IMG/VR virus record: IMGVR_UViG_3300036770_007547
Span: 62,001-126,000 of that record
Length of the DNA: 64,000 bases
Direction: 5' to 3' (one strand)
The notes beneath the pieces were generated by a model. That model saw only the letters and a program-made list of their open reading frames with translations. It was not told where the DNA came from and did no database searches. This document shows, one piece after another, positions 50,170 through 64,000 of the stretch. The translations under genes were made by a program, and so were the position numbers. The stretch's first letter is position 1. Each line of letters starts with the position of its first letter.

Positions 50170-50840
50170 GTCATGCAACGAACATTGGCCAGCTTTTTCC
50201 AATCTTCGGGCATGTTACTGGCTGCGCCCACTAGAGTAAACTGCACACCGCTGTAGGCACGCATGACATTTTCGATGTCCTGCATCCAAGAGCGTTCGTA
50301 GTGCGTGAGTTCTTGATTGTAGCCCAGCATGTAGATCTCTTGGTGCCCATCAAAAGCCGCGATATAAAGCGGCAGTGCTAGGTTGCTCATGGGCACTGAA
50401 TGTGGGATGAGATAAAATTTTCCGGGATTGGCCAAAACTTTGGGAGCCGTGGTATACACTGCGGTCATCTCATGATACATGACTCGACGTGTGAAGAATG
50501 GAGTGATATCGTAGTGTACTTTTTTTGATAGACTGTCCAGTTCTTCTGATATCGTAGTGGCATAAAAATCCAATCGCATGTCACGCCAGGTATCCAAAGC
50601 ACCGTAAGTCTGTAAACGCTTACGACCATGCAGTCCACCACGATGACGTTGTAAACGAGTGTGATCAAACATGCTTCGATCGCTGTTTGATCCAATCACT
50701 GCGGCACGCCCTGAGATCCAGTGATTCTGGATCTGATTTGGGATCCATTCGCGTTGTTGTATCTTGACACCATCACGCCATGTGGTGTCGGATATAACAA
50801 ATTCTCCGGTGTACTCGCTGCGATACCGCTCGGATATCAT
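50136..50840 (-). CDS. Hypothetical protein, possibly Maf/GT29-like Rossmann fold
   Basis: AAVIG...R, QTYG, LYIAAFDGHQEIYMLGY. Confidence 0.5.
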   Translation of the reverse strand: MISERYRSEYTGEFVISDTTWRDGVKIQQREWIPNQIQNHWISGRAAVIGSNSDRSMFDHTRLQRHRGGLHGRKRLQTYGALDTWRDMRLDFYATTISEELDSLSKKVHYDITPFFTRRVMYHEMTAVYTTAPKVLANPGKFYLIPHSVPMSNLALPLYIAAFDGHQEIYMLGYNQELTHYERSWMQDIENVMRAYSGVQFTLVGAASNMPEDWKKLANVRCMTHRKFVTHCDI

Positions 50841-53800
50841 AGACGTCCCACTACCACTTCGATCACACCCAAGCCTTCACTGTCGTGATCTTCCAAGGCT
50901 TTTCCTATCACTGATCCATACACAAACACGGTGTGATCTATGGCAGTGGCCACACCCGGTGAATCACTGCTGATCAAGAGATCTCCGCGACGTATACGTC
51001 CTTTCACCAAGCAAGGCACACGTCCAGTCAGTGCCACTGACACTGCTGCGGTATCATCTAGACCGGTATTCATCAAGAAAGCAGGATCGGTAGATACCAC
51101 GCCAATCACACGACTGCTGGCGGGAGTAGTGGTCTGCGTGACTTCGGCTGTACCACCAATTTCCACCACGGTGCCCGGGGGGTAGGATTGATCAGCCAGA
51201 TATTTTTCTGCCAAGTCAGCGTAAAGTGCGCTGGTTGCTCGAGCGTAAACTGTGTTGAAATAGTTGCTGCTTGATCCAATATTGCCCACACCGTTGGAAC
51301 CGGTCTTGATGATCTCGATGGTGCTGACTGCACCAGCTGTGACTAGATTACCGCCGGTGATGTTGCCTGTGGCCACCACTTGTGCGCCGGTGTTCAGATT
51401 GCCACCGGTGATGTTGCCAGTAAACTGTCCCAGGCCTCCCACATGTAGGTTACCAACCACACCCGCACCCCCGGCCACTTGAAGTGCACCAGTAGTGGTG
51501 GAAGTGGCTGCCGTGGTTGAAGTCACGTTGGCCAATGCAGAAATGATTATGTTGGCCGCGCTGAGAGTGGCCGAAGTGCTGAAATTACCGGCATTGACGT
51601 TGCCAGTCACAGTGGCATTGGCAGCGATGGCCAGGTTGCCACCTGATATGTTTCCAGTGACTGCTGCTGCACCGGCTGTGACCAAGTTACCACCTATGAC
51701 GTTGCCCGTGGATTGTACCACACCAGCTGTGGTCAGATTGCCACCTATGACGTTGCCTGTAGACTGTACCACACCACCTGTGACCAAGTTGCCACCGCCT
51801 ACGTTTCCAGTAGCAGACACTAGACCACCAGTGACGAGATTGCCGCCTGACACGTTTCCGGTAGCGATCACTTGCCCACCCACATAGGTTTCACCACCTA
51901 TGCCCACACCGCCGGCCACGATCAACGCACCAGTGGTGGTGGAAGTAGATGTTGTTGACGCTGTGAGATTGGCTGATCCGGCTTTGATGCCTGGATAGAC
52001 CAAGTTGGCATCAGAAAAATCAACTTCGGTGTTGGGTCGATTGGCTATGTTGGCAAAAAATTTGAACACACCGTCGGTGGCATCACGCACCAGACCGTTG
52101 TAGAGATTGCCACCGGCATTGTATTGACCCACGAAACCCAGATCCAGGAGGTCTGCGGCATTGTTGGCTCCCAAGAAGATCAAGGGATCATCAACCACCA
52201 GGGCCGACACGTCAATGGTGTTGCCTGAACCGCCCAGGGTGATGTTACCAACGATGTTGACGTCACCGCCCACGTTGAGGTTACCCGTGAGTCCCAAACC
52301 ACCATCAATCACCAAAGCACCGGTGGTTGTCGATGTGGAATCTGTGGGGATCACGATCTCGACCTTTTGGTCGGGGAAGATGATCATCTGTGTGTTACCA
52401 GTGCCAAAGCCGCCGGCACCAAACTTGATGGCATTGACATTGCCGTTGCTGCCCGTGGCGATGATGAGGTTACCGCCTGACGCCACATCAGTGGGAGCTT
52501 CAAACAAGAGATAACCGTCGCTGGCCTGGGTGAGCAGGAAAGCAGGGTCGTCGTATAGACTGGAGTTGATACCCATGGAAATCCAGCCCTGCTCGATGTT
52601 GCCCACGTCGTTGATGGCGATGAATTCACCATAGGCCAAGTTGCCCGAGCTTTCGTTGACTGAGGCGATCTCCGCTGCGCCAGCGATGTTGGCCACAGCG
52701 ATGATACGTCGCCCTTCCTCGCTTTCGCCCTGTGCTGTGAGCCAAGCGTTGACTTCGCCTGAATGCACCCAGTTGTTGGCTGTGATGTTGTTGGCTGTGA
52801 TATAGCTGGTTTCGCTGGCTGTGAGGTTACCGCCCATGTTAAGGTTGCCAGTGAGTCCCATGCCACCTGCCACACGCAATGCGCCAGTGGTGGTAGATGT
52901 AGATGTGGTTGGAATCTCGATGTGCACCTGCAGATCAGGTATGATCACCATCTGTGTGTTACCAGTGGCAAATCCGCCAGCACCAAACACGATGGAGTTG
53001 TTGCTGCCATTGCCGCCCGTGGCGATCACCAAGTTGCCTGAACCAGAAGTGTTGGCCGGGGCTTCAAACAGGATGTAGCCCTCGTCGGCCATCGTGAGCT
53101 GGAAGCTGGGATCATCGTAAGTGGAACTGTTGATGCCCATGCTGATCCAACCCTGGCTTACATTGCCCACGTCGTTGATGGCCAAAAATTCCGAGTAACT
53201 TAGATTGCCAGCATTTTGATTGACTGTGAGTATTTCGGCTGCGCCTGCGATGTTGGCCACAGCAGCGATGCGTCGGCCAGTGTCTGCTTCACTTTGATCT
53301 GTGAGCCACTGTTCCACTGGTCCCGAGTACACATGATTGTTGGCCAAGAAATTGTTGGCCAGCACTGTACTGGTATCGCCCACGGTGATATTACCAGCCA
53401 CATTGAGCTGGCCGCCCATGTTGAGGTTACCGGTAAGGCCCATGCCGCCGCCCACTCGCAAAGCACCAGTGGCGGTGTTGGTAGACACCGTGGGTATTTC
53501 GATGTGCACCTGCTCGTCAGGCATGATCAGCATCTGCACGTTACCAGTGGCAAATCCACCAGCGCCAAACACGATGTAGTTGTTGGCGCCATTGGTGCCG
53601 GTACCTATAACGAGGTTACCACCAGCAGTGGTTCCTGCTGGTGCTTCATACAAGAGATATCCACCATCAGCTTTGGTGATAGGGAAAGAAGGATCATCAT
53701 AGGTGCTGGAGTTGATGCCCATGCTGATCCAGCCCTGGTCGATGTTGCCAACATCGTTCATAGCAATGAATTCTGAATAGGCAAGATTGGCTGCACTTTC

Positions 53801-54715
53801 ATTGACCACAGCAATCTCAACCGGTCCTGCGATGTTGGCAACGGCCATGATGCGCCGATCTTCGGCAGAAACACCTTCGTCAGACAACCATCCATCCACA
53901 TTGCCCGAGAACAAGTGATCGGTGGCAGAAACATTGGCAGCTACGATGTTGCCATCAACTGTGAGTGTGCCGGCTGTGAGATTCCCCGACACATCAAGCG
54001 AGGCCATGTCCAGCACTGTGTTGGCCGCACTGTTGCCGGACAGCACGAATTCAGCACCTTCAGGTCCGGTGATGATCACACTGGTGGTATTGGCACTGAA
54101 AGTGGCATTGGCCAAGAATATGGAATTGCCGGCTAGATAAAGATCGTTCCAACGATTGGTGGTATTGCCCAGGCTGTAAGTGACATTGGCGCTGGGATTG
54201 AGGTTTCCTGCCACCGAAAAAGGCACAAGAGTGTCGTTCAATGTCAACACACCGTCGATGTTTACATTGGCCGATGCTTCGAGTTCTCCGGCCACCGAAA
54301 CTCCATTGGCAAAAATAGCTTCTGGGGTGATTGTGATTCCACTGCTGCCATCTTGAGTGTCAATGAGATTGGTGTAGACATTTCCGTGTAGATTATCTGC
54401 AGTGACATTGGCCACTACTGTGATTCCGTTGGGCAGCACTTCAACTATGCGTGTTCCGCCAACATTGATGTTGACGTTGCCACCCGAGCTTAAAATTTTG
54501 ACGTTGCTGGTACCATTGTAAATTTCGCTGGTGCTGAACGGAGATACCAGGTTTTCCACCCAGGGTTCGGTGGCTAGAGTGGTGCCCCCGGCTGTGGTAC
54601 CGTCGTGTACCCGCAGCGTACCGTTAGTGGTGTCAACCGTGATTTCGCCCAACGCTCCAGTGAAAGCGTCATTTTCTTGTTCAGTTCCTCGTCGATATTG
54701 TATCTGTACAGCCAT
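50837..54715 (-). CDS. Long tail fibre/spike protein: Mtd_N-like N-terminus, three internal repeats, C-terminal intramolecular-chaperone (peptidase G2-like) domain
   Basis: IQYRRGT...FTGALGEITVDT..TLRVHDG.TAGG; YADLAEKY...GVVSTDPA...VALTGRVPC...GKALE. Confidence 0.8.
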   Translation of the reverse strand: MAVQIQYRRGTEQENDAFTGALGEITVDTTNGTLRVHDGTTAGGTTLATEPWVENLVSPFSTSEIYNGTSNVKILSSGGNVNINVGGTRIVEVLPNGITVVANVTADNLHGNVYTNLIDTQDGSSGITITPEAIFANGVSVAGELEASANVNIDGVLTLNDTLVPFSVAGNLNPSANVTYSLGNTTNRWNDLYLAGNSIFLANATFSANTTSVIITGPEGAEFVLSGNSAANTVLDMASLDVSGNLTAGTLTVDGNIVAANVSATDHLFSGNVDGWLSDEGVSAEDRRIMAVANIAGPVEIAVVNESAANLAYSEFIAMNDVGNIDQGWISMGINSSTYDDPSFPITKADGGYLLYEAPAGTTAGGNLVIGTGTNGANNYIVFGAGGFATGNVQMLIMPDEQVHIEIPTVSTNTATGALRVGGGMGLTGNLNMGGQLNVAGNITVGDTSTVLANNFLANNHVYSGPVEQWLTDQSEADTGRRIAAVANIAGAAEILTVNQNAGNLSYSEFLAINDVGNVSQGWISMGINSSTYDDPSFQLTMADEGYILFEAPANTSGSGNLVIATGGNGSNNSIVFGAGGFATGNTQMVIIPDLQVHIEIPTTSTSTTTGALRVAGGMGLTGNLNMGGNLTASETSYITANNITANNWVHSGEVNAWLTAQGESEEGRRIIAVANIAGAAEIASVNESSGNLAYGEFIAINDVGNIEQGWISMGINSSLYDDPAFLLTQASDGYLLFEAPTDVASGGNLIIATGSNGNVNAIKFGAGGFGTGNTQMIIFPDQKVEIVIPTDSTSTTTGALVIDGGLGLTGNLNVGGDVNIVGNITLGGSGNTIDVSALVVDDPLIFLGANNAADLLDLGFVGQYNAGGNLYNGLVRDATDGVFKFFANIANRPNTEVDFSDANLVYPGIKAGSANLTASTTSTSTTTGALIVAGGVGIGGETYVGGQVIATGNVSGGNLVTGGLVSATGNVGGGNLVTGGVVQSTGNVIGGNLTTAGVVQSTGNVIGGNLVTAGAAAVTGNISGGNLAIAANATVTGNVNAGNFSTSATLSAANIIISALANVTSTTAATSTTTGALQVAGGAGVVGNLHVGGLGQFTGNITGGNLNTGAQVVATGNITGGNLVTAGAVSTIEIIKTGSNGVGNIGSSSNYFNTVYARATSALYADLAEKYLADQSYPPGTVVEIGGTAEVTQTTTPASSRVIGVVSTDPAFLMNTGLDDTAAVSVALTGRVPCLVKGRIRRGDLLISSDSPGVATAIDHTVFVYGSVIGKALEDHDSEGLGVIEVVVGRL
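52260..53920 (-). repeat. Three tandem ~190-aa domain repeats in the fibre gene (approximate bounds)
   Basis: GWISMGINSS.YDDP.F and FGAGGF.TGN.QM each occur three times, about 570-580 nt apart. Confidence 0.85.
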
Positions 54716-54799: not shown

Positions 54800-55606
54800 T
54801 CAGCTGGCATCAGTGGTGTACGTTATAGCTACAGATCCCCCGCTGGGTACCGAAATATTGTAAGTAGTGCTGGGCAACACCGATGAATTGGTGTAAGATG
54901 TGGGTGTTGCTGGATATCCAGTACCGGCCTCGTAGGCTCCGCCCGGGAACGAGTAAGACGCAAAAGCCGTGGCCGAAGTGCCCGCAGTCCCGGCGAAATA
55001 TTGGGTGGCAAACACCGCTGAACCGTAACGACGACTCTGTCTCGCACCAGTGTCGGGGTTGAATCCATACTCGCTGATGCTGATGGGTATGTCATCGTTG
55101 GGCAATGGGGCTATCGAGTTAAAGGTTCCGCCTTGGGCGATGTAAGCAGTTCCGCCCACGACTTGATAGGTAGGCTGCCCCCCATAAGGACCGGCCACTG
55201 TGGCTCGTTGTGTCCATCCTCGACCATCATTGTCTGTGACTGGACCGTACACTGATCCATAATAGTTGGTGGTCTCCACTGTGTTCACTCCGCTCAGTCC
55301 GTTGATTTCGTTGCGCTTTTGTTCAAGCAAGTCATAGAATTGCTGCATGGTGGCCACACCTGGGTCGTACTGGAGCACGATGTCAGCTATGCTAAATCCT
55401 ATGCTGACCCACATCACATAATCGATTCCGGTGCTGTCACTGACTCCGTTTGACCCTTGCCCGGTCATGGAATTGATGGAAAAAATGCCCCAAGGCACAG
55501 TGAAAGTACCACTGGATGTGTAGGTCACTGTGGTGGTAGTGAGTCGACGGGCTCGGAATCCCAGAGCCCGAGCACTGGCCGATCCCAGACTGTTGATCAT
55601 GGGCAT
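54800..55606 (-). CDS. Fibre tip / adhesin-like protein
   Basis: MPMINSLGSASARALG start; TYTSSGTFTVP; TAATG overlap with the upstream fibre gene. Confidence 0.6.
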   Translation of the reverse strand: MPMINSLGSASARALGFRARRLTTTTVTYTSSGTFTVPWGIFSINSMTGQGSNGVSDSTGIDYVMWVSIGFSIADIVLQYDPGVATMQQFYDLLEQKRNEINGLSGVNTVETTNYYGSVYGPVTDNDGRGWTQRATVAGPYGGQPTYQVVGGTAYIAQGGTFNSIAPLPNDDIPISISEYGFNPDTGARQSRRYGSAVFATQYFAGTAGTSATAFASYSFPGGAYEAGTGYPATPTSYTNSSVLPSTTYNISVPSGGSVAITYTTDAS

Positions 55607-57090
55607 TATGCGAATCTCGTTTGCGAAGCAAACACGGTGAAAGTGGCTGATCCAGTCTTGAATATCGAAAGCGTGTACATGTCAATACCGTTGGCATTTC
55701 CGCCCGTGGGCGCTACACCACCTTGCCACTTGGGTGTAACGCTGACACCATCGATGGTGGTAGCAGACTGATAATAAGCCGTGGAACCTTGCGTGGCCAA
55801 AAAAGCCAGTGTCAATGTTTGTCCAGTCTCCATGACCGAGTCCAGAGTGGTCGAAGAATTTCCACGCACATTCAATGTCCAGTTTGCTGATGCGTTGGTG
55901 GTATAATACACCACCGACTGTGTGAGAGCATCATAGTCAATGGTTCCTGTGGCTGCTGTGGCCGACACTGCGCAATCTTCCAACACGATACGAGTGTTCA
56001 CAGGTCCAGAAAACACCGCCGCAGCGCCGTTGAGTGTGCCCGACACGTTGGCACCACCAGTCACTGCCAGCGTGGTACCGTTCCAGGTGAGATTGGCGCT
56101 GCCTGCAAATGCGCCCGAATTGTTGTACTGTATCTGCGTGTCGCTGCCGCCGGCCGAGGTTGACACGCCGGTGAGTTGGCTTCCGTTGCCCAGAAAATAA
56201 TTGGCTGTGACGTTGCCGGTGGCTGCGATCGTGCCTGTGGCAGAGATGTTGCCAGCAGTGACGTTTGCAGTCACCGATGCGTTGCCGCTTGACACAGTTC
56301 CGGTCACAGTGAGCGATGCTGCCGACACTGCAGATGTTATACTGGCATTGCCCGCATTTAGATTTCCCGAAAACGTAGCCGATGCTCCGGTTATGCTACC
56401 GGTGTTGCCAATACTGGCCACATCATTGACATTGATGGTGGTGGCGGTGAACCAAGTGTTGGGGGCTGCGCGATATAGCAGGGCAGCATATTCTGCGCCC
56501 ACTGGTCCCACTTCGAGTCCGCCATTGTTGGCTTCGCTGGCTGTGGCAGCATTGTTGGCCACGTTGATGGTGATGTCATTGATGGTAGAAGTCTGGCTAT
56601 CTACGGTGGTAGTGGTACCGTTGACTTGCAGATTTCCAGTAATGATCACAGTACCGTTGCCGCTGGCCAAAGGTATGATATCGATGTTTCCGTTGGTGCT
56701 GACTATAGAATCCGAGCTCACTGTGATGTTGGCTGATCTGAGATTTCCGCCAGTGATGTTGCTGGTGGTCACGATCTCGCCCGAGGTAGTGATGTTTCCA
56801 CCCGTGACATTGCCGGTGGCCACGACCTGGGCTGCGGTCTCTACGTTGCCTGTGGCAATGAGTTTGCCTGATGCTGTGACGTTGCCACTCGTGAGGTTTC
56901 CCGATACCACGGATGTAGTGGCAGCTAGATTGGTAAAAGTTCCGTTGGATGCAGTAGTGTTCCCGATAACGATGTTGTTGATGGCACCGGTTCGTTGCAA
57001 CTGCCAGCCGCCACCATTCCATACCCAGGTTTTATCACCAAAGGTATAGGTCTCATCTAGTACAGGGTTGGCTGGAAATTGTAATGGCAT
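55606..57090 (-). CDS. Fibre-like protein with the shared 'MPL.FP..P' N-terminal module
   Basis: Start MPLQFPANP (57090, GGAG SD, TAAGTA at 57108-57113); GGSDTQIQYN; C-terminal KWQGG.AP..G.ANGID.YT. Confidence 0.7.
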   Translation of the reverse strand: MPLQFPANPVLDETYTFGDKTWVWNGGGWQLQRTGAINNIVIGNTTASNGTFTNLAATTSVVSGNLTSGNVTASGKLIATGNVETAAQVVATGNVTGGNITTSGEIVTTSNITGGNLRSANITVSSDSIVSTNGNIDIIPLASGNGTVIITGNLQVNGTTTTVDSQTSTINDITINVANNAATASEANNGGLEVGPVGAEYAALLYRAAPNTWFTATTINVNDVASIGNTGSITGASATFSGNLNAGNASITSAVSAASLTVTGTVSSGNASVTANVTAGNISATGTIAATGNVTANYFLGNGSQLTGVSTSAGGSDTQIQYNNSGAFAGSANLTWNGTTLAVTGGANVSGTLNGAAAVFSGPVNTRIVLEDCAVSATAATGTIDYDALTQSVVYYTTNASANWTLNVRGNSSTTLDSVMETGQTLTLAFLATQGSTAYYQSATTIDGVSVTPKWQGGVAPTGGNANGIDMYTLSIFKTGSATFTVFASQTRFA

Positions 57091-57113
57091 TTTTGGCTCC
57101 GATCCTGTACTTA

Positions 57114-57596
57114 TCAGTTGTTCCAACCATAACGATCTGGGGCTTGCTGCCCGGTATCATCGGCCATGCACCCTGAACAGCAGAATTTTGGGTACAGAAC
57201 CGGGTTATCCCGGAGATCAACAAGTTTGTCCAAGAATTCTTGCCGTTGTTCTGGAGTAAGATCGCGTGCTTCGTGTATGGTATCGATGTTGTTGATGTAA
57301 AATGTGGCTGCTCTCACACATTCGTCTAGCATGGCTTGGCGCTGGATTTCAGCTTCTTGTTGTGTCATGAATCTCGTGTCCCAAACATCGTACACACGAC
57401 CGTTGTTGAGTTCGTAATGAAATCCGGTTATCACTAACCAGTCATCGATCACGGGCTTGTCACTGCGGTCAAACGGCACATAATCATGCGGATTGTTGTT
57501 GGCATCAAAGTCGGGAAAGGCTGTCCGTAGATTGTCCTCCAGGACTGGGTGATCATAGATCACACCATCTTTGTATCGTATATACAGGTTCATCAC
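57114..57596 (-). CDS. Putative tail fibre assembly/accessory protein
   Basis: LYIR...IYDHPV..DNL..AFP; follows the glycine-rich adhesin gene. Confidence 0.55.
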   Translation of the reverse strand: MMNLYIRYKDGVIYDHPVLEDNLRTAFPDFDANNNPHDYVPFDRSDKPVIDDWLVITGFHYELNNGRVYDVWDTRFMTQQEAEIQRQAMLDECVRAATFYINNIDTIHEARDLTPEQRQEFLDKLVDLRDNPVLYPKFCCSGCMADDTGQQAPDRYGWNN

Positions 57597-58468
57597 ACGT
57601 TTCCAGTGTTGGTGCTAGGGAACGCACGCCCTTCGCCCCAAATTATACGCACTGCACCGCCAGATCCGCTGCCCCCGACGCCATCACCGCCAGATCCTCC
57701 ACCGCCACCGCCACCATAGGCTCCGCCGGGACCGCCCGGTCCTCCGGCTGGACCTGAACCATTGGTTCCATTGCCGCCACTGGATCCGCCTCCACCACCG
57801 CCACCACCTTGGAAGCTAGATCCAAATCCGCCGCCACCGTTGCTGCCTTGACCTAGTATACCTACACCACCACCGCCACCACCGCCACCTTCGGCATTTG
57901 TATCTGGTGGCCAACCACGGCCTGCACCACCACCACCACCGGCTCCGCCGCTGCCCGAAGATCCCGGATTACCATCTGACTCCACGACTCCACTGCCGCC
58001 ATTGCCGCCTGTTCCGCTGTAGCCGCCAGCACCACCAGCACCAGCACCACCGCCACCACCAGCTTGGCATGATCCACCGCTGCCGCCATTTCCCCCACCA
58101 TCACCGGTGTAAGAGCCGCCACCTCCACCGCCTCCACCGTTGTTGCCGCCGTTGCTACCACCGCCACCTCGCACAGTACCAGTGTCAATGAAATAACTGG
58201 CGCCGCCTGCTCCACCAACCACCACCGTGTAACTGGTTCCGGGCGAGACCGAAATATTGTTTTTGTAACCTAAACCACCACCGCCACCGCCTCCGGCGCA
58301 GTTTGTTCCGCCCGATCCCCCACCACCTACTGCTACCACTGACACGGAAAAAACACCGGCTGGACACAGCCAGCTGTAAGTGCCGGCCGAAGTGTAGGCT
58401 TGTTGTCCGGGTGGTGCTATGTATCGACCTTTGCCAAACCCACTGGCCATCAAGGTGTAGATAGTCAC
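57593..58468 (-). CDS. Glycine-rich adhesin-like protein (T-even gp38-like polyglycine architecture)
   Basis: YTSAGTYSWLCPAGV.SVSVVAVGGGG, long GG runs, GSGGAVRIIWG..RAFP. Confidence 0.7.
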   Translation of the reverse strand: MTIYTLMASGFGKGRYIAPPGQQAYTSAGTYSWLCPAGVFSVSVVAVGGGGSGGTNCAGGGGGGGLGYKNNISVSPGTSYTVVVGGAGGASYFIDTGTVRGGGGSNGGNNGGGGGGGGSYTGDGGGNGGSGGSCQAGGGGGAGAGGAGGYSGTGGNGGSGVVESDGNPGSSGSGGAGGGGGAGRGWPPDTNAEGGGGGGGGVGILGQGSNGGGGFGSSFQGGGGGGGGSSGGNGTNGSGPAGGPGGPGGAYGGGGGGGSGGDGVGGSGSGGAVRIIWGEGRAFPSTNTGNV

Positions 58469-58953
58469 TAACTGACTCCTCCTCCACCCACTACAAAAGT
58501 ATTGGCACCCACACAGAATATAGTGGCGATACCGCGTTGTGCTAGAGTGCGATTGCCGGTGTCGGATGTACCAATGTTGTACATGGTCACGCCGGTGTCT
58601 TGAACCAAAGTGATATTGCCCGTGCTGTTGTTGTAAACTGCCACCGATTGACCCGAAGTGAACACGCTGTTAGGCACAGTGACGCTGGAGTTGCTGCTGA
58701 TGTATTTTCCAGCGTCGCTGTCTATCAATGTGTAACTTGCGGTCTTGGCATTTTCAGGCACAGTGCGCAGTTCTCCCAAAGAATCAGACACCGTAGTAAA
58801 TGTACCTGTGCTAGGAGTCACATTGCCAATGGGGATACCATTGATGGCCCCAGTGCTTTGTAGTTCCCAGGCAGATCCATTCCATACCCATGTTTTATTG
58901 TTAAAACTGTAGGTATCGTTGAGATTAGGGCTGGCGGGAAAATCTAAAGGCAT
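58468..58953 (-). CDS. Short fibre adaptor protein
   Basis: MPLDFPASP N-module; C-terminal domain (..GNRTLAQ.G.AT.FC..ANTFV..GGG.S) shared with the 62209 gene. Confidence 0.65.
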   Translation of the reverse strand: MPLDFPASPNLNDTYSFNNKTWVWNGSAWELQSTGAINGIPIGNVTPSTGTFTTVSDSLGELRTVPENAKTASYTLIDSDAGKYISSNSSVTVPNSVFTSGQSVAVYNNSTGNITLVQDTGVTMYNIGTSDTGNRTLAQRGIATIFCVGANTFVVGGGGVS

Positions 58954-58967
58954 ATCATTTGTTCCAG

Positions 58968-59285
58968 TTATTGATAAGGATATCTATCTCGTATGGCTTG
59001 CACCGCGTCCAACCATTCTTGTTGGGTGGCTTCACCGCGTTGTACTTTGAAAAAGAGTGGGTCAGCCTCGACTTCGAATGCTCGCTGGCGATTTGATCGA
59101 GCTTGTCGGTTGGGTTCCTCGGCGGTGAGTCTCGTCAATTCGGCCTCGGCCTCGGCCTGAGTAGGTTGCACTCCTTGATGGTCGGGCTGCCAGACAATGG
59201 TGGCATAATCATTGTCTTCCATGGTGAATCGAGCAAGCGGATTCAACGAAAGTATGGCACGACCGAGATTTATTCTCCTCGTCAT
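58968..59285 (-). CDS. Tail fibre assembly chaperone-like (XkdW-like) protein
   Basis: AILSLNP.A.F..., PT..E.EAE, R..AF..EADPLFFK.QRGE, I..RYPY; ATGA overlap. Confidence 0.65.
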   Translation of the reverse strand: MTRRINLGRAILSLNPLARFTMEDNDYATIVWQPDHQGVQPTQAEAEAELTRLTAEEPNRQARSNRQRAFEVEADPLFFKVQRGEATQQEWLDAVQAIRDRYPYQ

Positions 59286-61198
59286 GGTGCTATTTCCTCC
59301 AGCATTATATATGTCCATCCCTGGTAAGGCAGTTCAAGAAGCGTGCCAGAGAGACCTACTGCCGCCTGGAAGTTAAAACTGCGAGTTCCGCTGCCAGCAG
59401 AGGAAAAACCTACCATGGTTATGGGAACCAGCAATACTTCGGTGTTGGTAGCGTCATTGGTACTGAGTATTATATAATAAACCTCACCAAGATTTGTGCT
59501 GCCTTCGCGTAGCTGGAAATAGCCCGAAGGAAAACTCTGGGCATTGCCATCAATGTATACACAGGTAGTCACTGTCATCTTGACTATGCTGGTGCTACGC
59601 TCGGCCGGGATAGTGATCTGTGGTGTGGCGTTGAAGCCTGTGACTTCGGTGAGGCTGGTAGATGTGGTGCTGAAGGAACTTGACTTGTAAAAATACTTGC
59701 TCTGAACTACGCCGCTGGTACTACCACCAGATGCAGCTTGGCTGATCCAGGCCGATCCATTTGATGTCAGCACATTGCCACTGGTTCCCGGTGCTAGTTG
59801 GCGCACAGCGCTGGTACTATTGCCTAGCAGCACATAGTTGCTGGTAAGGCTGGCGGCACCGGTACCACCTTGGCTCACTGATACAGTGCCAACCACGTTG
59901 GCCACGGCAATGTTGCCCAAGAAATTCAAACCTGACACATTGGCGCTGGCTATGAGATTGCCGCCTGACACATTGCCTGTAGCAGCTACAACTCCAGCAG
60001 TTACTAGATTGCCACCAGTGATGTTGCCAGTGGCCACCACTTGTGCACCGGTTTCAATATTGCCACCCGACACATTGCCTGTAGCAGCTACAACTCCAGC
60101 AGTTACTAGATTGCCACCAGTGATGTTGCCAGTGGCCGATACTAAGCCTGCAGTATTGAGATTAGCGCCTGACACGTTTCCAGTGAAACTGGGTGCATCT
60201 GACACAGCAAATGTAGCCGTGTCACTGGCAGCATTGCCAGTGATAGTGAGATTGTTGCCCGCGGTCAACGTCAGTGTTTCGGTACTGCTGGTAGCAATTA
60301 AACTGGTGCCATTGGCATCAATGGTGCTAAATGAATTGGCTGCGCCGCCGCCTCCAGTACTAGTAAAACTCTGCGACGCCTCCATTTCGGCCCATTGGCT
60401 GCTGTTTCCATCATTGAAATAAATGAACTGTTTGCCAGTGTCAGTGTCAATCCACACATCTCCTTGGCTGGGAGAGCTTGGGGCCGATCCAGAGACCGTG
60501 GTCTTGGCACCAGCCAACTGGCTGCCGTTGCCCAAGAAATAGCTGGCAGTGATGTTTCCGGTCACGTCCAAAGGACTGTCACTGACCCACTTGTCGCCAG
60601 TGCTGGCATAAGTCAAAGCAGCATATTCGCTGCCCACAGGACCCACTTTGATACCACCGCCGTTGGCTTCTGATGCTGTGCTGGCGTTGTTGGCCACGTT
60701 GATGGCTAGATCATTGATGGTGACTGTGGTACTATCCACTGTGGTAGTAGTGCCCGTGACCTGCAGATTGCCAGCAATCACCACTGTGCCACCAGCACCG
60801 GTAGTACTGGGATCAATGGTCAATGTGGTGTTGGCACTGACGATGGTGTCAGACCCAACTGTGATATTGCCTATCGTGAGATTTCCGCCGGCAAGATTAC
60901 CAGTATAAGTCGGTAGATAGGCTCCAACATTGGCATTACCATAGCTTTCGGGCAAACCAGTGAGCTGGCTACCATTGCCGATAAAGTAGTTGCCAGTGAC
61001 GTTACCGGTCGCACTGACATTTCCAGTGGCAGTTATTGTGGTAAAAGCCCCGGTGTTGGGGGTGACGTTACCAATAGGGATGTTGTTGATAGACCCTGCT
61101 GAATTCAGGCGCCAAGCTGACCCATTGTAGATCCAGGTCTTACCACCAAACGAGTAAGTGTCATTCAACGAAGGATTGGCAGGAAAATCTAAAGGCAT
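59282..61198 (-). CDS. Tail fibre-like protein
   Basis: MPLDFPANP N-module; 17-aa ATGN.GGN repeats; GGTGA, APGTSGNVLTSNG. Confidence 0.72.
   Translation of the reverse strand: MPLDFPANPSLNDTYSFGGKTWIYNGSAWRLNSAGSINNIPIGNVTPNTGAFTTITATGNVSATGNVTGNYFIGNGSQLTGLPESYGNANVGAYLPTYTGNLAGGNLTIGNITVGSDTIVSANTTLTIDPSTTGAGGTVVIAGNLQVTGTTTTVDSTTVTINDLAINVANNASTASEANGGGIKVGPVGSEYAALTYASTGDKWVSDSPLDVTGNITASYFLGNGSQLAGAKTTVSGSAPSSPSQGDVWIDTDTGKQFIYFNDGNSSQWAEMEASQSFTSTGGGGAANSFSTIDANGTSLIATSSTETLTLTAGNNLTITGNAASDTATFAVSDAPSFTGNVSGANLNTAGLVSATGNITGGNLVTAGVVAATGNVSGGNIETGAQVVATGNITGGNLVTAGVVAATGNVSGGNLIASANVSGLNFLGNIAVANVVGTVSVSQGGTGAASLTSNYVLLGNSTSAVRQLAPGTSGNVLTSNGSAWISQAASGGSTSGVVQSKYFYKSSSFSTTSTSLTEVTGFNATPQITIPAERSTSIVKMTVTTCVYIDGNAQSFPSGYFQLREGSTNLGEVYYIILSTNDATNTEVLLVPITMVGFSSAGSGTRSFNFQAAVGLSGTLLELPYQGWTYIMLEEIAP
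59967..60137. repeat. Exact 69-bp direct repeat (59967-60035 and 60069-60137), period 102 bp
   Basis: gacacattgcctgtagcagc...gttgccagtggcc occurs twice. Confidence 0.85.
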
Positions 61199-61223
61199 GT
61201 CTGGTCTCGGTGTATTTGACTCG

Positions 61224-61231
61224 TATTTATA
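61224..61231 (-). promoter_or_regulatory. Canonical T4 late promoter TATAAATA
   Basis: tatttata on the plus strand, upstream of 61198. Confidence 0.8.
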
Positions 61232-61237
61232 GTGATT

Positions 61238-62209
61238 TTATGGGGCCCATCTATACACCTGGCCATCAGCGCCTATGAGATACACATAATTTTCACCGTC
61301 GCTGCGAGCATCGCGTATATTAGTGACACCTGAAATCAGTGTTGGTGCCGAGCCCGAAGTGTTCACGCTCCATACCCCGGTAGTCATAGGAACTATGATA
61401 GTACCGCCCGGGGATATACAAGGTTGTCCGGTGCGCAGAGTGCCCATTCCAGTGACATTGGCGTTAGAATAGCTAGTACCAGGATATGTGGCATAGAGAA
61501 CACCAAATGTAGCAGATCCTTCAGGTGCAGATACTATGGCATTGAATCCTGTGACCGGATTTGATGCCACATAGTTTTGATTTCCAGTGACAGAGATAGG
61601 ACCCACAGCACTGCCACCGACATTGGTGGCTATGTAAGCCGCTGCCGGCGATGAGCTGCTGCCAAGTCCCGCATGCAAGAACCGGTTGCTGCCGTTGTTG
61701 GTCACAGTCACAGTGGCCATACATCTTCCAAATGGCAGCCCAGCCGCGGAGGCCGAAACCCAGTTATTAGAGGTCACCATGTTTTGATCATACCCACCAC
61801 ACACTCCATAGGTTCCATCGGTGGTGGGTCTGAAGAAATTGTTTTGGCCGCCCGAAGTATTGAGGATACTGCTGAATGTCACGCCGCCGTTGGTGCTGCG
61901 GAACATGGAACCTCGATGCTGAGCAATCACGATCGAGCTAGAGATGGCCAGCAGTCCAAAACCGTATGCCGAGCCGGTTCCCACCATGCTGCCTCGCTGT
62001 GTCCAATTGGCTCCTAGATCAGCGCTGTAATATATGGTACCGGTGCCGCCGGGCTCGGCCGATTGTGCCATGGCAAACATGGCACCATCAGAGGTGATGT
62101 CTAGTTGCCAACCGCCAGCTGGTGAACTGTTCAATGATCCTACTAGAACAAAGCCGCTGACTATGCCTGTGCCTGGACTATATCCTGCCAAAAGATTATA
62201 GATGCTCAT
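61238..62209 (-). CDS. Beta-propeller-like (BNR/Asp-box) fibre tip protein
   Basis: YSADLGANW and RSTNGGVTF Asp-box motifs; start MSIYNLLAG in a TAATG overlap. Confidence 0.6.
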   Translation of the reverse strand: MSIYNLLAGYSPGTGIVSGFVLVGSLNSSPAGGWQLDITSDGAMFAMAQSAEPGGTGTIYYSADLGANWTQRGSMVGTGSAYGFGLLAISSSIVIAQHRGSMFRSTNGGVTFSSILNTSGGQNNFFRPTTDGTYGVCGGYDQNMVTSNNWVSASAAGLPFGRCMATVTVTNNGSNRFLHAGLGSSSSPAAAYIATNVGGSAVGPISVTGNQNYVASNPVTGFNAIVSAPEGSATFGVLYATYPGTSYSNANVTGMGTLRTGQPCISPGGTIIVPMTTGVWSVNTSGSAPTLISGVTNIRDARSDGENYVYLIGADGQVYRWAP

Positions 62210-64000
62210 TAACTGAGCCCGCCGCCCGTGATCACAAAAGTGTTGGCGTCGGTACAAAACACTGTGGCCAATCCGTTTTGTGCCAGTGTGCGATTTCCTG
62301 AGTTTGTGGTGCCCACTTGATACATGGTCACTCCTGCGTCTGAGATCAACAAAATGTTGCCTTCGCTGCGATTGAATATGGTCACGCTCTGTCCGGCCGA
62401 AAACACGCCATTGGGCACCGTGATGTTGGCATTGCTGTTGATGTAGAGACCTGCATCGTTCAAGGTCAAGGTATAATCTTCGTTTTTAGTGGCTGCAGGA
62501 ACTGTGCGCAAATCGCCTTTGCTGTCACTGACTGTGTTACCAGTGACTTGCGAGGCTGAAATGTTTCCTGCCGTGATGTTGCTAGTTGCAGCTATGGCAC
62601 CTGTTGTGTTGAAGTTGGCAGCGTCTATGTTTCCTGTAAACACACCAATGCCACTGCCAATGTTGCCAATGTTCGCATTACCGGTCACAGTCAGTATACC
62701 TGCAGTTGAAACATTGCCAGCAGAGATGTTTGCAGTGGCTTGTATCCCCAAGGTGGTGATCCAAGAGTTGCTGCTGTTGTCAAACAACCAGGTGGCATAT
62801 TCTGAGCCCACCGGGCCTACTTTGATTCCTCCGCCGTCGGCCTGGCTGGCGTTGGCTGCATTGTTGGCGAGATTGAAGTCTTTGTCATTGATGGTGACTG
62901 TGACTGAATCCACAGTGGTAGTGGTTCCGGTGACCTGCAGATTTCCGGCCACTATCACCAAACCGCTTGACCCTGCTGCGGCTGGATCAATTGTTATGGT
63001 GCCGTCGGCGCTGGTGATGCTGTCACTTGATATAGAGATATTTCCCACTGTGACTGTGTTGGCTTCAACCAAGTTGGCTGCCACATTGGTTGATGTGACA
63101 TTTCCGATCACCGAAGTAAAGTTTCCAAGGTTGGCGTTGACATTGACTGCGATAACAGTGTTTGAGTCAATGGTGGTGGCTTCAATCACTTCGGGCAGTG
63201 CTAGGTTGCCCGAACTGGCATCCAATGTGGTGTTTCCGATTTGTATCACATCGGGCAAAATTAGATTGCCGCCTGAAGCCGAGATGTTGGCCTCGCCCAA
63301 GAAAATTGTAGAATTTGATAGATAGAGATCTCGCCAGCGATTGGTGGCGTTTCCGAGGTCGTAAGTGATATCGCTGCTGGGTATCACATTGCCACTGATG
63401 TTGGCTAGATTGGGCGTTTCTGTGACACTGATACTGGTGGCAGCCTCCATCTCAGCCCATTGATTGGAATCTCCGTCGCTGAAATAGATGAATTGAACAC
63501 CTGTGGCAGTATCAATCCAAATGTCACCCTGACTGGGGCTGGCTGGGGCGGTGCCTGACACAGTGACATTGGCACCAAACTGTATGCCAGTGAGCTGGCT
63601 ACCATTACCAATAAAATAAGACGCGTCAACATTGGCTGTGGTAGTGATGTTGCCAGTGAGGCTGTTGAGATTTCCAGTATACGTGGGTAGATACGCGGCC
63701 ACGTTGGCATTGGAGTAGTTGCTCTCACCACCGCCACCTGCCGAGAATGCCTGGAACGCCTCCATTTCGGCCCATTGGCTCGTGACCCCATCATTGAAAT
63801 AGAGATATTGGATGGCAGTATCACTGTCAATCCATATGTCCCCGATCACAGCATTGGCTGGATATTCGCTCTGCACATAGACGTTGCCTACGTTGATTCC
63901 TGTGAGCTGGCTACCGTTGCCCAGGAAATAGTTGGCAGTGATGTTGCCGGTGGCTGATACCGCACCAAATTCACCGGTAGTGTTTCCTGCACTGTTTCCG
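62209..64000 (-). CDS. Tail fibre-like protein, 5' end outside the window
   Basis: Frame is open from the window end (...ATGNITANYFLGNGSQLTG...); two GDIWID...QWAEMEA modules; C-terminal adaptor domain. Confidence 0.75.
   Translation of the reverse strand, partial: GNSAGNTTGEFGAVSATGNITANYFLGNGSQLTGINVGNVYVQSEYPANAVIGDIWIDSDTAIQYLYFNDGVTSQWAEMEAFQAFSAGGGGESNYSNANVAAYLPTYTGNLNSLTGNITTTANVDASYFIGNGSQLTGIQFGANVTVSGTAPASPSQGDIWIDTATGVQFIYFSDGDSNQWAEMEAATSISVTETPNLANISGNVIPSSDITYDLGNATNRWRDLYLSNSTIFLGEANISASGGNLILPDVIQIGNTTLDASSGNLALPEVIEATTIDSNTVIAVNVNANLGNFTSVIGNVTSTNVAANLVEANTVTVGNISISSDSITSADGTITIDPAAAGSSGLVIVAGNLQVTGTTTTVDSVTVTINDKDFNLANNAANASQADGGGIKVGPVGSEYATWLFDNSSNSWITTLGIQATANISAGNVSTAGILTVTGNANIGNIGSGIGVFTGNIDAANFNTTGAIAATSNITAGNISASQVTGNTVSDSKGDLRTVPAATKNEDYTLTLNDAGLYINSNANITVPNGVFSAGQSVTIFNRSEGNILLISDAGVTMYQVGTTNSGNRTLAQNGLATVFCTDANTFVITGGGLS

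What the first reader, a model, noticed from the sequence alone, without database searches (positions are those of the whole stretch)
54800..64000. Combinatorial fibre array: common docking N-terminus, swappable adaptors and coupled tip genes
Three genes start with the same module, MPL(D/Q)FP..P.L..TY(S/T)F..KTW..NG..W.L...G.IN.I.IGN (57090, 58953, 61198). Three fibre genes overlap a downstream tip gene by exactly 1 nt (TAATG at 55606 and 62209; TAGTG at 58468). The two fibres sharing the ...GGG(V/L)S C-terminal domain are followed by tips with matching starts (MTIYTLMA, MSIYNLLA) but unrelated bodies (polyglycine versus Asp-box propeller). This resembles T-even gp37/gp38 pairing expanded into a plug-and-socket library for several receptors.
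Basis: partly seen in the sequence, partly recalled or inferred. Interest (0 to 1): 0.6.

Follow-up and report, generated by a model that had tools for sequence, protein, structure and literature searches.

The report
Plug-and-socket tail-fibre tips in a phage
A large phage carries several tail-fibre genes that end in a "socket" domain, each followed by a gene starting with a short matching "plug" peptide and then an interchangeable receptor-binding head; the same design recurs in hundreds of aquatic phage contigs and resembles the branching-domain/docking-peptide system known from Klebsiella and E. coli phages.

Summary
Three minus-strand genes share a 50-residue N-terminal module, found nowhere else in the 222,775-bp genome. 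Three fibre genes overlap the next gene by 1 nt. Two fibres share a C-terminal domain, and their downstream genes share only their first ~9 residues.

Comparative data generalise this. "Socket A" (P0003, fibre A) is always the extreme C-terminus in 84 phage loci. The next gene nearly always starts M-[ST]-I-x-Q-[LM]-L-x-G, followed by unrelated bodies. "Socket B" (the knob of P0001) is followed by genes starting MP..x[RK]GAASA[RQ]GFG, as P0002 does. A third pair occurs in close relatives, where the same propeller body carries a different plug behind a different socket. Six body families occur with both plug types. Plug conservation is at the protein level.

The socket A model is a T4 gp10/gp9-like beta-sandwich. 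That is the fold used as a docking domain in CBA120, G7C, K1-5 and KP32.

The likeliest mechanism is non-covalent docking of swappable receptor-binding heads. Binding itself is not shown: the one complex prediction gave no answer. The 1-nt overlap is ordinary translational coupling. I rate this a new variant of a known kind.

The parts
62209..64000 (-). 3' part of fibre A (1312 aa; the gene continues beyond the window to genome 128147). Its N-terminus is MGLTKIRAGQ.., not the N-module.
62212..62529 (-). Socket A: the C-terminal ~106-aa beta-sandwich domain of fibre A (ends ..GGGLS).
   Evidence: 61% identical to the P0003 domain. Modelled at pLDDT 92. T4 gp10/gp9-like fold, Z 8-11.7.
61238..62209 (-). 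Tip P0006 (323 aa): plug A, a floppy linker, then a beta-propeller with Asp-box-like motifs.
62183..62209 (-). Plug A of P0006 (MSIYNLLAG).
   Evidence: Ranks first of 4476 candidate starts in the genome with a PSSM built only from other phages. Residues 1-16 have pLDDT < 50.
59282..61198 (-). Fibre P0005 (638 aa): N-module, shaft with 17-aa repeats, and its own C-terminal head. No socket. A TATAAATA late-promoter-like site lies at 61231.
61049..61198 (-). N-module of P0005 (first 50 aa).
58968..59285 (-). Small gene (105 aa from the ATG at 59285, a 4-nt overlap with P0005; 116 aa from 59318). Candidate fibre-assembly chaperone; matches phrog_9114/2432.
   Evidence: The chaperone role is inference only.
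58468..58953 (-). Adaptor P0003 (161 aa): N-module, short linker, socket A.
58804..58953 (-). N-module of P0003.
58471..58788 (-). Socket A of P0003 (residues 56-161, ends ..GGGGVS).
57593..58468 (-). Tip P0004 (291 aa, GTG start): plug A followed by a Gly_rich_2-type glycine-rich head.
   Evidence: phrog_4474 at 2e-41. Homologues hit Pfam PF21722. The family profile hits Pam3 fibre gp24 at E 0.006.
58442..58468 (-). Plug A of P0004 (MTIYTLMAS).
   Evidence: Ranks 6th of 4476 candidate starts.
57114..57596 (-). 160-aa gene overlapping the end of P0004 by 4 nt (or 1 nt from the ATG at 57593). Candidate chaperone of the glycine-rich head.
   Evidence: No family or PDB match. The role is inference only.
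55606..57090 (-). Fibre P0001 (494 aa): N-module, shaft, socket B (knob).
56941..57090 (-). N-module of P0001. The true start is taken as the ATG at 57090, not the TTG at 57126.
55609..55983 (-). Socket B: the C-terminal knob domain (phrog_5906; ..TPKWQGG..ASQTRFA).
   Evidence: 585 relatives in IMG/VR, always at the extreme C-terminus.
54800..55606 (-). Tip P0002 (268 aa): plug B followed by a small beta-rich body. Its family has at least 57 clusters at 50% identity.
55556..55606 (-). Plug B of P0002 (MPMINSLGSASARALGF).
   Evidence: Fits the consensus found behind knob domains in 80 loci and at the N-terminus of its own homologues.
50837..54715 (-). Neighbouring 1292-aa fibre: Mtd_N N-terminus, three ~215-aa internal repeats and a C-terminal tail-fibre-type domain. 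It has no socket and no plug partner.

Best explanation
The array encodes a modular receptor-binding apparatus built from non-covalent connectors.

Stalk proteins end in a dedicated docking domain (socket). The gene immediately downstream encodes a head protein. Its first 9-17 residues form a cognate docking peptide (plug), followed by a flexible Gly/Ser-rich linker and an exchangeable receptor-binding or glycan-binding body.

The window holds two orthogonal pairs.
- Socket A is a T4 gp10/gp9-like beta-sandwich. It sits on the 161-aa adaptor P0003 and on the 1312-aa fibre A. Its plug is M-[ST]-I-x-Q/N-[LM]-L-x-G, carried by the glycine-rich head P0004 and the beta-propeller P0006.
- Socket B is the knob at the end of P0001. 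Its plug is MP..x[RK]GAASA[RQ]GFG, carried by P0002.

Three stalks (P0001, P0003, P0005) share a 50-aa N-terminal anchor. They therefore probably occupy the same kind of site on the virion. P0005 carries its own head instead of a socket.

Tight start/stop coupling keeps stalk and head co-expressed.

Shown here: domain architecture, co-variation of plug with socket, shuffling of bodies, protein-level constraint on the plug, and the fold of socket A and of P0006.

Inferred: that plug binds socket, that the heads are virion components that bind host receptors, that the N-module is an anchor, and that the two small genes are chaperones.
For: Socket A
- It is the extreme C-terminus in all 84 loci examined.
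- 74 of those loci have an adjacent downstream gene, and 68 of these overlap by 1 or 4 nt.
- Residues 2-8 of the downstream protein carry 1.3-3.0 bits of information each; residues 10-20 carry 0.3-0.8.
- A PSSM built without this genome ranks the P0006 start 1st and the P0004 start 6th of 4476 candidate starts.

Socket B
- It has 585 IMG/VR relatives and is always C-terminal.
- The next gene starts with a ~17-aa conserved peptide that P0002 fits.
- P0002's own homologues all start with that peptide.

Co-variation and shuffling
- Socket type predicts plug type in 38/38 and 57/62 distinct N-termini.
- Six body families occur behind both plug types.
- Natural swap: in syntenic relatives the P0006-type propeller (58-65% identity) follows a third socket and starts M[SG]GMLLN.Y. 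That plug recurs behind that socket in 42 loci with other bodies.
- Third-codon-position entropy in the plugs is 1.7-1.8 bits, against 0.9-1.5 at positions 1-2. About 65% of codon pairs encoding the same residue are synonymous variants.

Folds
- Socket A model: pLDDT 92.
- Its best structural matches are Pa223 spike (Z 11.7), KP1 baseplate (11.3), CBA120 TSP4 residues 50-183 (9.0-9.2), T4 gp9 (8.6) and T4 gp10 (8.0). No other phage domain scores above 6 (StcE 6.9; cupredoxins about 3.5).
- T4gp10-like domains are documented docking sites for N-terminal peptides of 7-29 aa on second receptor-binding proteins (PMC6872550). This has been validated experimentally in KP32, K11 and KP34 (PMC13352976).
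- P0006 model: propeller at pLDDT 91 with residues 1-16 disordered.

Head identity and virion location
- The P0004 family is Pfam Gly_rich_2. It weakly matches the receptor-recognising domain of Pam3 fibre gp24.
- In cyanophage S-SCSM1 the knob fibre and the gene after it (which starts MPLIG..) are both annotated as virion proteins from mass spectrometry.
Against: - No direct evidence of binding. The one complex prediction (socket A x3 with P0004 residues 1-100) scored 0.04, which the tool rates as no answer.
- No proteomics exists for this phage.
- Four or five socket A loci have no plug-bearing gene within 3 kb. The socket can therefore stand alone, or its partner can be encoded elsewhere.
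- The socket B fold is undetermined. It has no detectable relation to socket A or to any solved structure.
- The S-SCSM1 plug is divergent.
- Linkage alone makes neighbouring segments co-vary. The argument therefore rests on bodies being shuffled while the plug stays with the socket.
Confidence: 0.68

Rival explanations
1. The downstream genes encode fibre-assembly chaperones (like T4 gp38/gp57, lambda or Mu Tfa, or Pam3 gp25). They bind the fibre end transiently and are not in the virion. The conserved N-terminal peptide would be the chaperone's handle on the domain it folds.
For: - Chaperone genes typically lie just downstream of fibre genes and are translationally coupled to them.
- The Pam3 chaperone gp25 binds the distal fibre end at 3:3 stoichiometry.
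- One structural match of socket A is a Mu-type fibre/chaperone complex, 6o38, at Z 8.7.
Against: - Bodies range from 167 to more than 1000 aa.
- The bodies have folds typical of receptor-binding heads: a beta-propeller, Gly_rich_2 (as in the Pam3 and S16 distal tips), and LamG in relatives.
- Only 9-17 residues co-vary with the fibre domain, whereas the rest of the protein is freely exchanged.
- Socket A folds confidently on its own as a compact gp10-like domain.
- Separate small chaperone-like genes follow P0004 and P0005.
- The S-SCSM1 downstream protein is annotated as a virion protein.
Confidence: 0.14
2. Stalk and head are made as one polypeptide by programmed -1 frameshifting or stop read-through at the overlap. 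The conserved peptide would then be an internal linker.
For: Nearly all socket A junctions place the downstream gene in the same relative frame (-1 or -4 overlap).
Against: - Every downstream frame begins with its own ATG/GTG/TTG exactly at the conserved Met.
- The window's junctions (..CAGTTAGTG....CAGTTAATG..) show no slippery heptamer.
- Socket B and C junctions have gaps of -4 to +16 nt in all three relative frames.
- In close relatives the propeller gene lies 10-11 nt after the fibre.
- The same overlaps are common between unrelated genes in this genome.
Confidence: 0.03
3. The conserved junction is a DNA-level recombination linker: a homology patch that lets cassettes be exchanged, with no role as a protein-protein connector.
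For: Mosaic boundaries in phages often coincide with short conserved sequences, and bodies are clearly exchanged exactly at this boundary.
Against: - Conservation is at the amino-acid level. Third codon positions are almost saturated (1.7-1.8 bits).
- About two thirds of codon pairs encoding identical residues differ synonymously.
- Each plug type is tied to one socket fold across myo-, sipho- and podovirus contexts.

This rival is compatible with the main model as an additional benefit.
Confidence: 0.05
4. The sockets are themselves the terminal receptor-binding domains. The downstream proteins act independently, for example as separately attached fibres or non-structural proteins. Their conserved N-termini would serve some other common purpose, such as attachment elsewhere on the virion.
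For: - Some socket A fibres have no adjacent plug gene.
- The socket B knob resembles a distal head in size and position.
- No binding evidence was obtained.
Against: - If the plugs docked elsewhere, plug type would follow the virion type rather than the preceding C-terminal domain. Instead it tracks the socket in 95 of 100 distinct cases across unrelated phage backbones.
- Within one lineage the plug changes together with the socket.
- Socket A has the fold of known docking domains rather than of known receptor-binding tips.
Confidence: 0.1

Closest known systems
Anchor-branch and adapter receptor-binding-protein systems: a T4 gp10-like branching domain plus a conserved N-terminal docking peptide. 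Examples are K1-5/K1E/SP6 adapter gp37 with two tailspikes, G7C gp66/gp63.1, CBA120 TSP1-4, and Klebsiella KP32/KP34/K11.
   Same: - A gp10-like beta-sandwich on the first protein.
- A short conserved N-terminal peptide on the second protein, followed by a freely exchanged body. Those systems use 7-29 aa; this one uses 9-17 aa.
- An N-terminal anchor shared by the proteins that attach to the virion.
- Pure adaptors with no head of their own exist there too: K1-5 gp37 and the first receptor-binding protein of phage 2044-307w, comparable to P0003.
- The domain-peptide interaction has been validated experimentally in KP32, K11 and KP34.
   Different: - Here the socket is the extreme C-terminus of a stalk, sometimes a long one (1312 aa). 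The head therefore sits at the distal end rather than as a side branch near the tail.
- The plug sequences are new.
- At least two further sockets (the knob B, and type C) show no detectable relation to gp10.
- The hosts are aquatic bacteria, and the cassette crosses myo-, sipho- and podoviruses.
- The heads are mostly glycine-rich, propeller or LamG-type binders rather than beta-helix depolymerases.
T2/T6/S16-type gp37-gp38 (long tail fibre plus a separate distal adhesin).
   Same: - A separate protein encoded directly after the fibre gene caps the distal end and determines receptor specificity.
- The adhesin has a glycine-rich (polyglycine-II) head. According to PMC9608196 the Pam3 Gly-rich domain, which the P0004 family weakly matches, resembles S16 gp38.
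- One pipeline annotated a relative's plug B glycine-rich gene as 'tail fiber adhesin gp38'.
   Different: - gp38 attaches through a folded N-terminal domain of three short helices onto the gp37 tip. It does not use a 9-17-aa peptide on a gp10-like or knob domain.
- No sequence similarity to gp37 or gp38 was detected.
- Here the same connector carries many unrelated head folds.
Pam3 cyanophage fibre gp24 with chaperone gp25.
   Same: - A TNF-like plus glycine-rich distal receptor-binding domain of the Gly_rich_2 type.
- A ~160-aa gene follows the glycine-rich protein. Here it is the 160-aa ORF at 57114-57596; in Pam3 it is gp25 (162 aa).
   Different: - In Pam3 the glycine-rich domain is fused to its own baseplate-docking helix. 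Here it is a separate protein with a plug.
- The 160-aa ORF shows no detectable similarity to gp25.
Arrays of fibre genes with a common M-x-[LI]-x-F-P-x-x-P N-terminus in T4-like cyanophages (for example S-N03 and ACG-2014i).
   Same: - The same N-terminal module (45-58% identity over 30-50 aa), always at residue 1 of proteins annotated as tail fibres.
- Up to seven consecutive genes carry it in S-N03.
   Different: - No function is assigned to the module in those records.
- This phage has a PA5oct-like T4-type capsid protein (66% identity), not a Kyanoviridae one.

Membership tests
T4 gp10-like branching domain / conserved docking peptide RBP systems | The first protein carries a T4 gp10 (D2/D3)-like beta-sandwich domain. 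| tested here: met
   For socket A only. AlphaFold model at pLDDT 92. Foldseek and VIA matches: CBA120 TSP4 residues 50-183 (Z 9.0-9.2), T4 gp9 (8.6), T4 gp10 (8.0), KP1 baseplate (11.3). Among other phage domains none exceeds Z 6. This rests on fold similarity of a predicted model, not on sequence homology.
T4 gp10-like branching domain / conserved docking peptide RBP systems | The second protein has a short N-terminal peptide that is conserved while the rest of the protein varies. | tested here: met
   47 distinct plug A N-termini and 62 distinct plug B N-termini precede more than 30 body families. Information content drops after residue 9 (A) or about residue 17 (B).
T4 gp10-like branching domain / conserved docking peptide RBP systems | The peptide physically binds the branching domain and is required for incorporation of the second protein. 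| tested here: inconclusive
   The complex prediction scored 0.04, a 'no answer'. Only indirect support exists: plug/socket co-variation.
T4 gp10-like branching domain / conserved docking peptide RBP systems | Both proteins are virion components. | not testable with these tools
   No proteome exists for this phage. The S-SCSM1 record marks a knob fibre and its downstream gene as virion proteins.
T4 gp10-like branching domain / conserved docking peptide RBP systems | The same applies to socket B (knob) and socket C. | tested here: not met
   The knob profile shows no relation to socket A (hhalign probability 0.3%) or to PDB sequences. Its fold was not modelled. These pairs work like the family but cannot be filed in it.
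T2/S16-type gp38 adhesin | A folded N-terminal attachment domain binds the gp37 tip, followed by a polyglycine-II sandwich head. | tested here: not met
   No similarity to gp38 or gp37 was found in Pfam, PHROGs or PDB. Attachment here would be through a 9-aa peptide. The glycine-rich head is related only at the level of Gly_rich_2 / Pam3 gp24.
Pfam Gly_rich_2 (PF21722) | A match to the family model. | tested here: inconclusive
   P0004 itself has no hit at E <= 1. Three of its four aligned homologues do hit (best 1.5e-9). phrog_4474 matches at 2e-41.
BNR/Asp-box beta-propeller (sialidase-like) | A propeller fold with Asp-box repeats; catalytic residues if it is an enzyme. | tested here: inconclusive
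   The propeller fold is met (pLDDT 91, generic propeller matches with TM 0.65-0.70). The BNR repeat hit is below the cut-off (18.7 vs 27 bits). Catalytic residues were not examined.
Tail-fibre assembly chaperones (Tfa / T4 gp38 / Pam3 gp25) | A small protein encoded after the fibre gene, related to known chaperone families. | tested here: inconclusive
   The 160-aa and 105/116-aa ORFs have the right size and position. They match only PHROGs of unknown function or nothing at all. The tip proteins P0002, P0004 and P0006 do not fit this family by size or fold.

The most novel reading that the evidence does not exclude
Aquatic phages share a small set of mutually orthogonal connector pairs. There are at least three: a gp10-like socket A, a knob socket B and a socket C, each with its own 9-17-residue plug. 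Together these would work as a cross-morphotype 'connector code'. Any receptor-binding head could then be moved between myo-, sipho- and podoviruses by swapping a few N-terminal codons. Sockets B and C would be docking folds not previously recognised. One phage could mount several orthogonal heads at once without mis-pairing.
Probability: 0.45. Interest if true: 0.72.

Novelty: new variant of a known kind. Interest (0 to 1): 0.6.

Why it matters
Host range in marine and freshwater phages (cyanophages, roseophages, Limnohabitans phages) is poorly understood. Their fibre genes are mostly annotated 'hypothetical', 'PE_PGRS' or 'sericin-like'.

A simple rule would locate the true receptor-binding genes in hundreds of uncultured phage genomes: a socket at the end of a stalk, a plug at the start of the next gene, then an exchangeable head. 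The same rule would correct start-codon calls. For example, the database call for P0002 omits its plug.

The rule would also explain how heads move between unrelated phages. It would extend the branching-domain/docking-peptide principle, so far established for Klebsiella and E. coli phages, to new connector families that could serve as orthogonal parts for fibre engineering.

Tried and rejected
- Megablast of the 9.2-kb region against 50,697 phage records: no match.
- Complex prediction, socket A x3 (56-row alignment) with P0004 residues 1-100: score 0.04, 'no answer'. Not used as evidence either way.
- Pairwise BLASTP between tips (P0002/P0004, P0006/P0004): nothing significant.
- NCBIfam scan: nothing useful.
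- PDB sequence searches with P0004, P0006, P0001, the socket A profile, the knob profile and the 160-aa ORF: no significant hit.
- hhalign of the knob profile against the socket A profile: unrelated.
- First attempt at search for related loci with a six-sequence alignment failed because no stretch was conserved enough. It was repeated with three sequences.
- tblastn of P0002 against phages, and the word-index protein search, found only P0002 itself. Exhaustive HMMER then found its family.
- Frameshift or read-through fusion was considered and rejected (see rivals).
- The idea that the exact 1-nt overlap is diagnostic was rejected: overlaps are common genome-wide and gaps differ in relatives.
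- Signal-peptide reading of the plugs was considered and rejected on inspection. They lack a charged n-region and have only 6-7 hydrophobic residues, and their type follows the upstream domain. This is my own reading; no predictor was run.
- The read-mapping tools were not used.

Full report
**Context**

The window is positions 62001-126000 of a single 222,775-bp contig with 51% G+C. The contig encodes a T4-type major capsid protein that is 66% identical to those of PA5oct, Vibrio phage 2.275.O and Sinorhizobium phage Phosso, and it also encodes a portal protein. It is therefore a large myovirus-like phage. No near-identical record exists among 50,697 phage genomes.

**Anatomy**

All genes in 50.8-64 kb lie on the minus strand. 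In order of transcription they are:
- Fibre A: 1312 aa. Only its last 596 residues are in the window. Its N-terminus, MGLTKIRAGQ.., lies at genome 128147.
- P0006: 323 aa.
- P0005: 638 aa.
- A 105/116-aa ORF.
- P0003: 161 aa.
- P0004: 291 aa, GTG start.
- A 160-aa ORF.
- P0001: 494 aa.
- P0002: 268 aa.
- A 1292-aa fibre with an Mtd_N N-terminus.

**Checking the observation**

*N-module.* P0001, P0003 and P0005 share 30-38 of their first 50 residues, against 4-10 of the next 50. A regex scan and an HMM scan over all six frames of the genome find this module in those three genes only.

*Overlaps.* The three 1-nt overlaps are present exactly as described. They are not distinctive, however. The genome has about 45 candidate -1/-4 junctions, including two more inside this array.

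*Shared C-terminal domain.* P0003 and fibre A share a ~106-residue C-terminal domain at 61% identity. The domain is unique to these two genes in the genome.

*Downstream genes.* They share 5 of their first 8 residues and nothing else. P0004 is 44% glycine. P0006 folds as a beta-propeller at pLDDT 91.

**Socket A and plug A are a widespread cassette**

tblastn found the P0003/fibre A C-terminal domain at the ends of fibres in four cultured phages: a cyanosiphovirus (S-CBS2), a cyanopodovirus (S-B28), a Limnohabitans podovirus and a Sphaerotilus podovirus. In each, the next gene overlaps by 1 or 4 nt.

A scan of IMG/VR gave 252 relatives, of which 80 loci were examined. The results were:
- The domain is always the extreme C-terminus.
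- Across all 84 loci, 74 have an adjacent downstream gene, and 68 of these overlap by 1 or 4 nt.
- The downstream protein starts with M-[ST]-I-x-Q/N-[LM]-L-x-G.
- Information content is 1.3-3.0 bits per position for residues 2-8 and falls to 0.3-0.8 for residues 10-20.
- After the peptide the proteins diverge into many families, 167 to more than 1000 aa long, both glycine-rich and not.

A PSSM built from these loci, excluding this genome, ranks the P0006 start first and the P0004 start sixth among 4476 possible starts in the genome.

**Socket B and plug B**

The C-terminal knob of P0001 (phrog_5906) occurs in cyanophage and roseophage fibres. It has 585 IMG/VR relatives. In the 80 loci examined it is always C-terminal.

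The next gene usually starts 9 nt downstream. It begins with a ~17-residue peptide, MP-x-[IL]-x-[TS]-[RK]-G-A-A-S-A-[RQK]-G-F-G, which is again followed by diverse bodies. P0002 (MPMINSLGSASARALGF) fits this peptide.

Exhaustive HMMER shows that P0002 belongs to a family of at least 57 clusters of ~230-250-aa proteins. All nine members that I read begin with this peptide.

The database's own gene call for P0002 starts at Val27 and so misses the plug.

**Socket C, and a natural swap**

Homologues of the P0006 propeller (36-65% identity) carry other N-termini. Two contigs are syntenic with this phage, sharing the order Mtd_N fibre, NUDIX, gp15-like. In them the propeller follows a fibre with a third C-terminal domain and starts M[SG]GMLLN.Y instead of MSIYNLLAG. 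One of those fibres begins with the same N-module as P0001, P0003 and P0005.

That third domain has 42 IMG/VR relatives. In these it is again C-terminal and is followed by the same plug with varied bodies. Those bodies include P0004-like glycine-rich heads.

**Co-variation and shuffling**

With leave-one-out scoring, every one of 38 distinct N-termini behind socket A scores higher with the plug A matrix. Of 62 distinct N-termini behind socket B, 57 score higher with the plug B matrix. The exceptions are register shifts, wrong start calls or genes without a plug.

Six body families contain members with plug A and members with plug B. The plug therefore stays with the socket, not with the body.

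The constraint is on the peptide, not the DNA. Third codon positions are nearly saturated (1.7-1.8 bits), against 0.9-1.5 bits at positions 1 and 2. About 65% of codon pairs encoding the same residue differ synonymously.

**Folds**

The socket A model (56-sequence alignment, pLDDT 92) is a beta-sandwich. Its structural matches form a distinct group:

| Match | Z |
|---|---|
| Pa223 capsid spike | 11.7 |
| Klebsiella phage KP1 baseplate protein | 11.3 |
| Acinetobacter phage Solidus tailspike | 10.1 |
| CBA120 TSP4, residues 50-183 | 9.0-9.2 |
| Mu-type fibre in 6o38 | 8.7 |
| T4 gp9 | 8.6 |
| T4 gp10 | 8.0 |

The rows below this group are StcE (6.9), two cyanophage tail/portal proteins (5.5-5.9) and cupredoxins (about 3.5).

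T4 gp10-like domains are the documented attachment sites for other receptor-binding proteins in T4, G7C, CBA120, K1-5 and Klebsiella phages. There the partner carries a conserved N-terminal peptide of 7-29 residues (PMC6872550). The domain-peptide pair was shown experimentally to be necessary for incorporation of the second protein in KP32, K11 and KP34 (PMC13352976).

In the P0006 model the first 16 residues have pLDDT below 50 and precede a confident propeller. That is what one expects of a docking peptide on a flexible linker.

The P0004 family matches Pfam Gly_rich_2. Its profile weakly matches Pam3 fibre gp24 (E 0.006). [quoted passage not shown]

The knob (socket B) has no detectable relation to socket A or to solved structures.

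**The N-module**

In 25 of 26 IMG/VR loci scanned (one had no hit), and in cyanophages S-N03 and ACG-2014i, the module always begins at the first residue of the ORF. It occurs in one to seven genes per locus and precedes varied C-termini. Those C-termini include socket A, socket B (P0001) and socket C (in L175).

This fits an N-terminal anchor shared by alternative stalks. Its docking partner is unknown.

**Mechanism proposed**

Stalks attach to the virion by their N-terminal anchor. Stalks that end in a socket capture a head protein through its plug. Orthogonal socket/plug pairs keep heads on the right stalks. Heads are exchanged by recombination just after the plug. Start/stop coupling co-expresses the partners. 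P0005 carries its own head. The 105-aa and 160-aa ORFs are candidate chaperones, by position and size only.

*Shown here:* architecture, co-variation, shuffling, protein-level constraint, and the folds of socket A and P0006.

*Inferred:* binding, virion location, receptor binding, and the anchor and chaperone roles.

The only outside evidence on virion location is the S-SCSM1 record. It marks a knob fibre and the gene after it (which starts MPLIG..) as virion proteins found by mass spectrometry.

**Caveats**

- The one complex prediction gave no answer.
- Four or five socket A loci have no plug gene nearby.
- Linkage inflates co-variation. The weight of the argument therefore lies on body shuffling and on the natural swap within one lineage.

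**Comparison and verdict**

The system works like the branching-domain/docking-peptide systems of enterobacterial phages. For socket A it also shares their docking fold. It differs in several ways:
- The socket is at the distal C-terminus of the stalk.
- The plug sequences are different.
- There are at least two further socket types without detectable gp10 similarity.
- The cassette is spread across aquatic phages of all three tail morphologies.

It is only loosely like T-even gp37/gp38. I rate it a new variant of a known kind: of moderate to good interest and readily testable.

Noticed in passing
window 50837-54715 (-): The 1292-aa fibre has an Mtd_N N-terminal domain, three tandem ~215-aa repeats (each ..GRRI.AVANIAG..GWISMGINSS.YDDP..) and a C-terminal ~140-aa domain matched by tail-fibre PHROGs. 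Relatives carry much shorter versions (346-352 aa) with the same two ends.
   Followed up: partly
L005 (genome 124001-142000): genes at genome 124209-128147, 128153-131140 and 131194-131937: Fibre A and the two fibre genes upstream of it (995 aa and 247 aa) share a second N-terminal motif (M-x-[LVI]-[TN]-[KR]-I-x-x-[GN]-[QN]-I). This may be a second anchor class, just beyond the window. The 247-aa and 135-aa proteins also resemble parts of the 995-aa one.
   Followed up: no
window 54800-55606 (-): The public database's gene call for P0002 is 242 aa and starts at Val27. It therefore omits the conserved plug B peptide. The ATG at 55606 is the better start.
   Followed up: yes
L172, L175, L210-L251: A third socket (..GLKV.LYYRR..L) with plug M[SG][GY][FM]L[LV]N[SP]Y occurs in 42 IMG/VR loci and in close relatives of this phage. 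This genome itself lacks it.
   Followed up: yes
window 61231 (-): This is the only exact T4-type late-promoter motif (TATAAATA) in 50-64 kb. It starts 33 nt upstream of the P0005 start, which suggests that P0005 begins a transcription unit.
   Followed up: no
window 51631-51880 and 59953-60175: 51-nt (17-aa) tandem repeats of the type TGN[VI][ST]GGNL[VI]T[AG]G.. lie in the shafts of the 1292-aa fibre and of P0005. The motif NYF[LI]GNGSQLTG recurs in several fibres and gives weak 'Chlorovirus glycoprotein repeat' hits.
   Followed up: no
L175:1087-4020: A relative encodes a 977-aa Gly_rich_2 + Laminin_G_3 protein starting MAQFPSTTNASDIW... The same kind of N-terminus (MAQFPS..AYGVW..) is found on some P0006-type propellers. 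It may be a fourth connector type.
   Followed up: no
L010, L029, L051, L071, L048/L049: These socket A fibres have no plug-bearing gene within 3 kb on either strand. The socket may be unused here, or its partner may be encoded elsewhere.
   Followed up: partly
genome 169188 onward (+), outside the window: An open frame of about 4986 codons follows an 1184-codon frame with a 1/4-nt overlap. It was not examined.
   Followed up: no
window 49657-50169 (+) and the relatives L172/L175: A NUDIX-type gene and a T4 gp15-like gene lie next to the Mtd_N fibre in this phage and in its relatives. This synteny was used to recognise the relatives.
   Followed up: no
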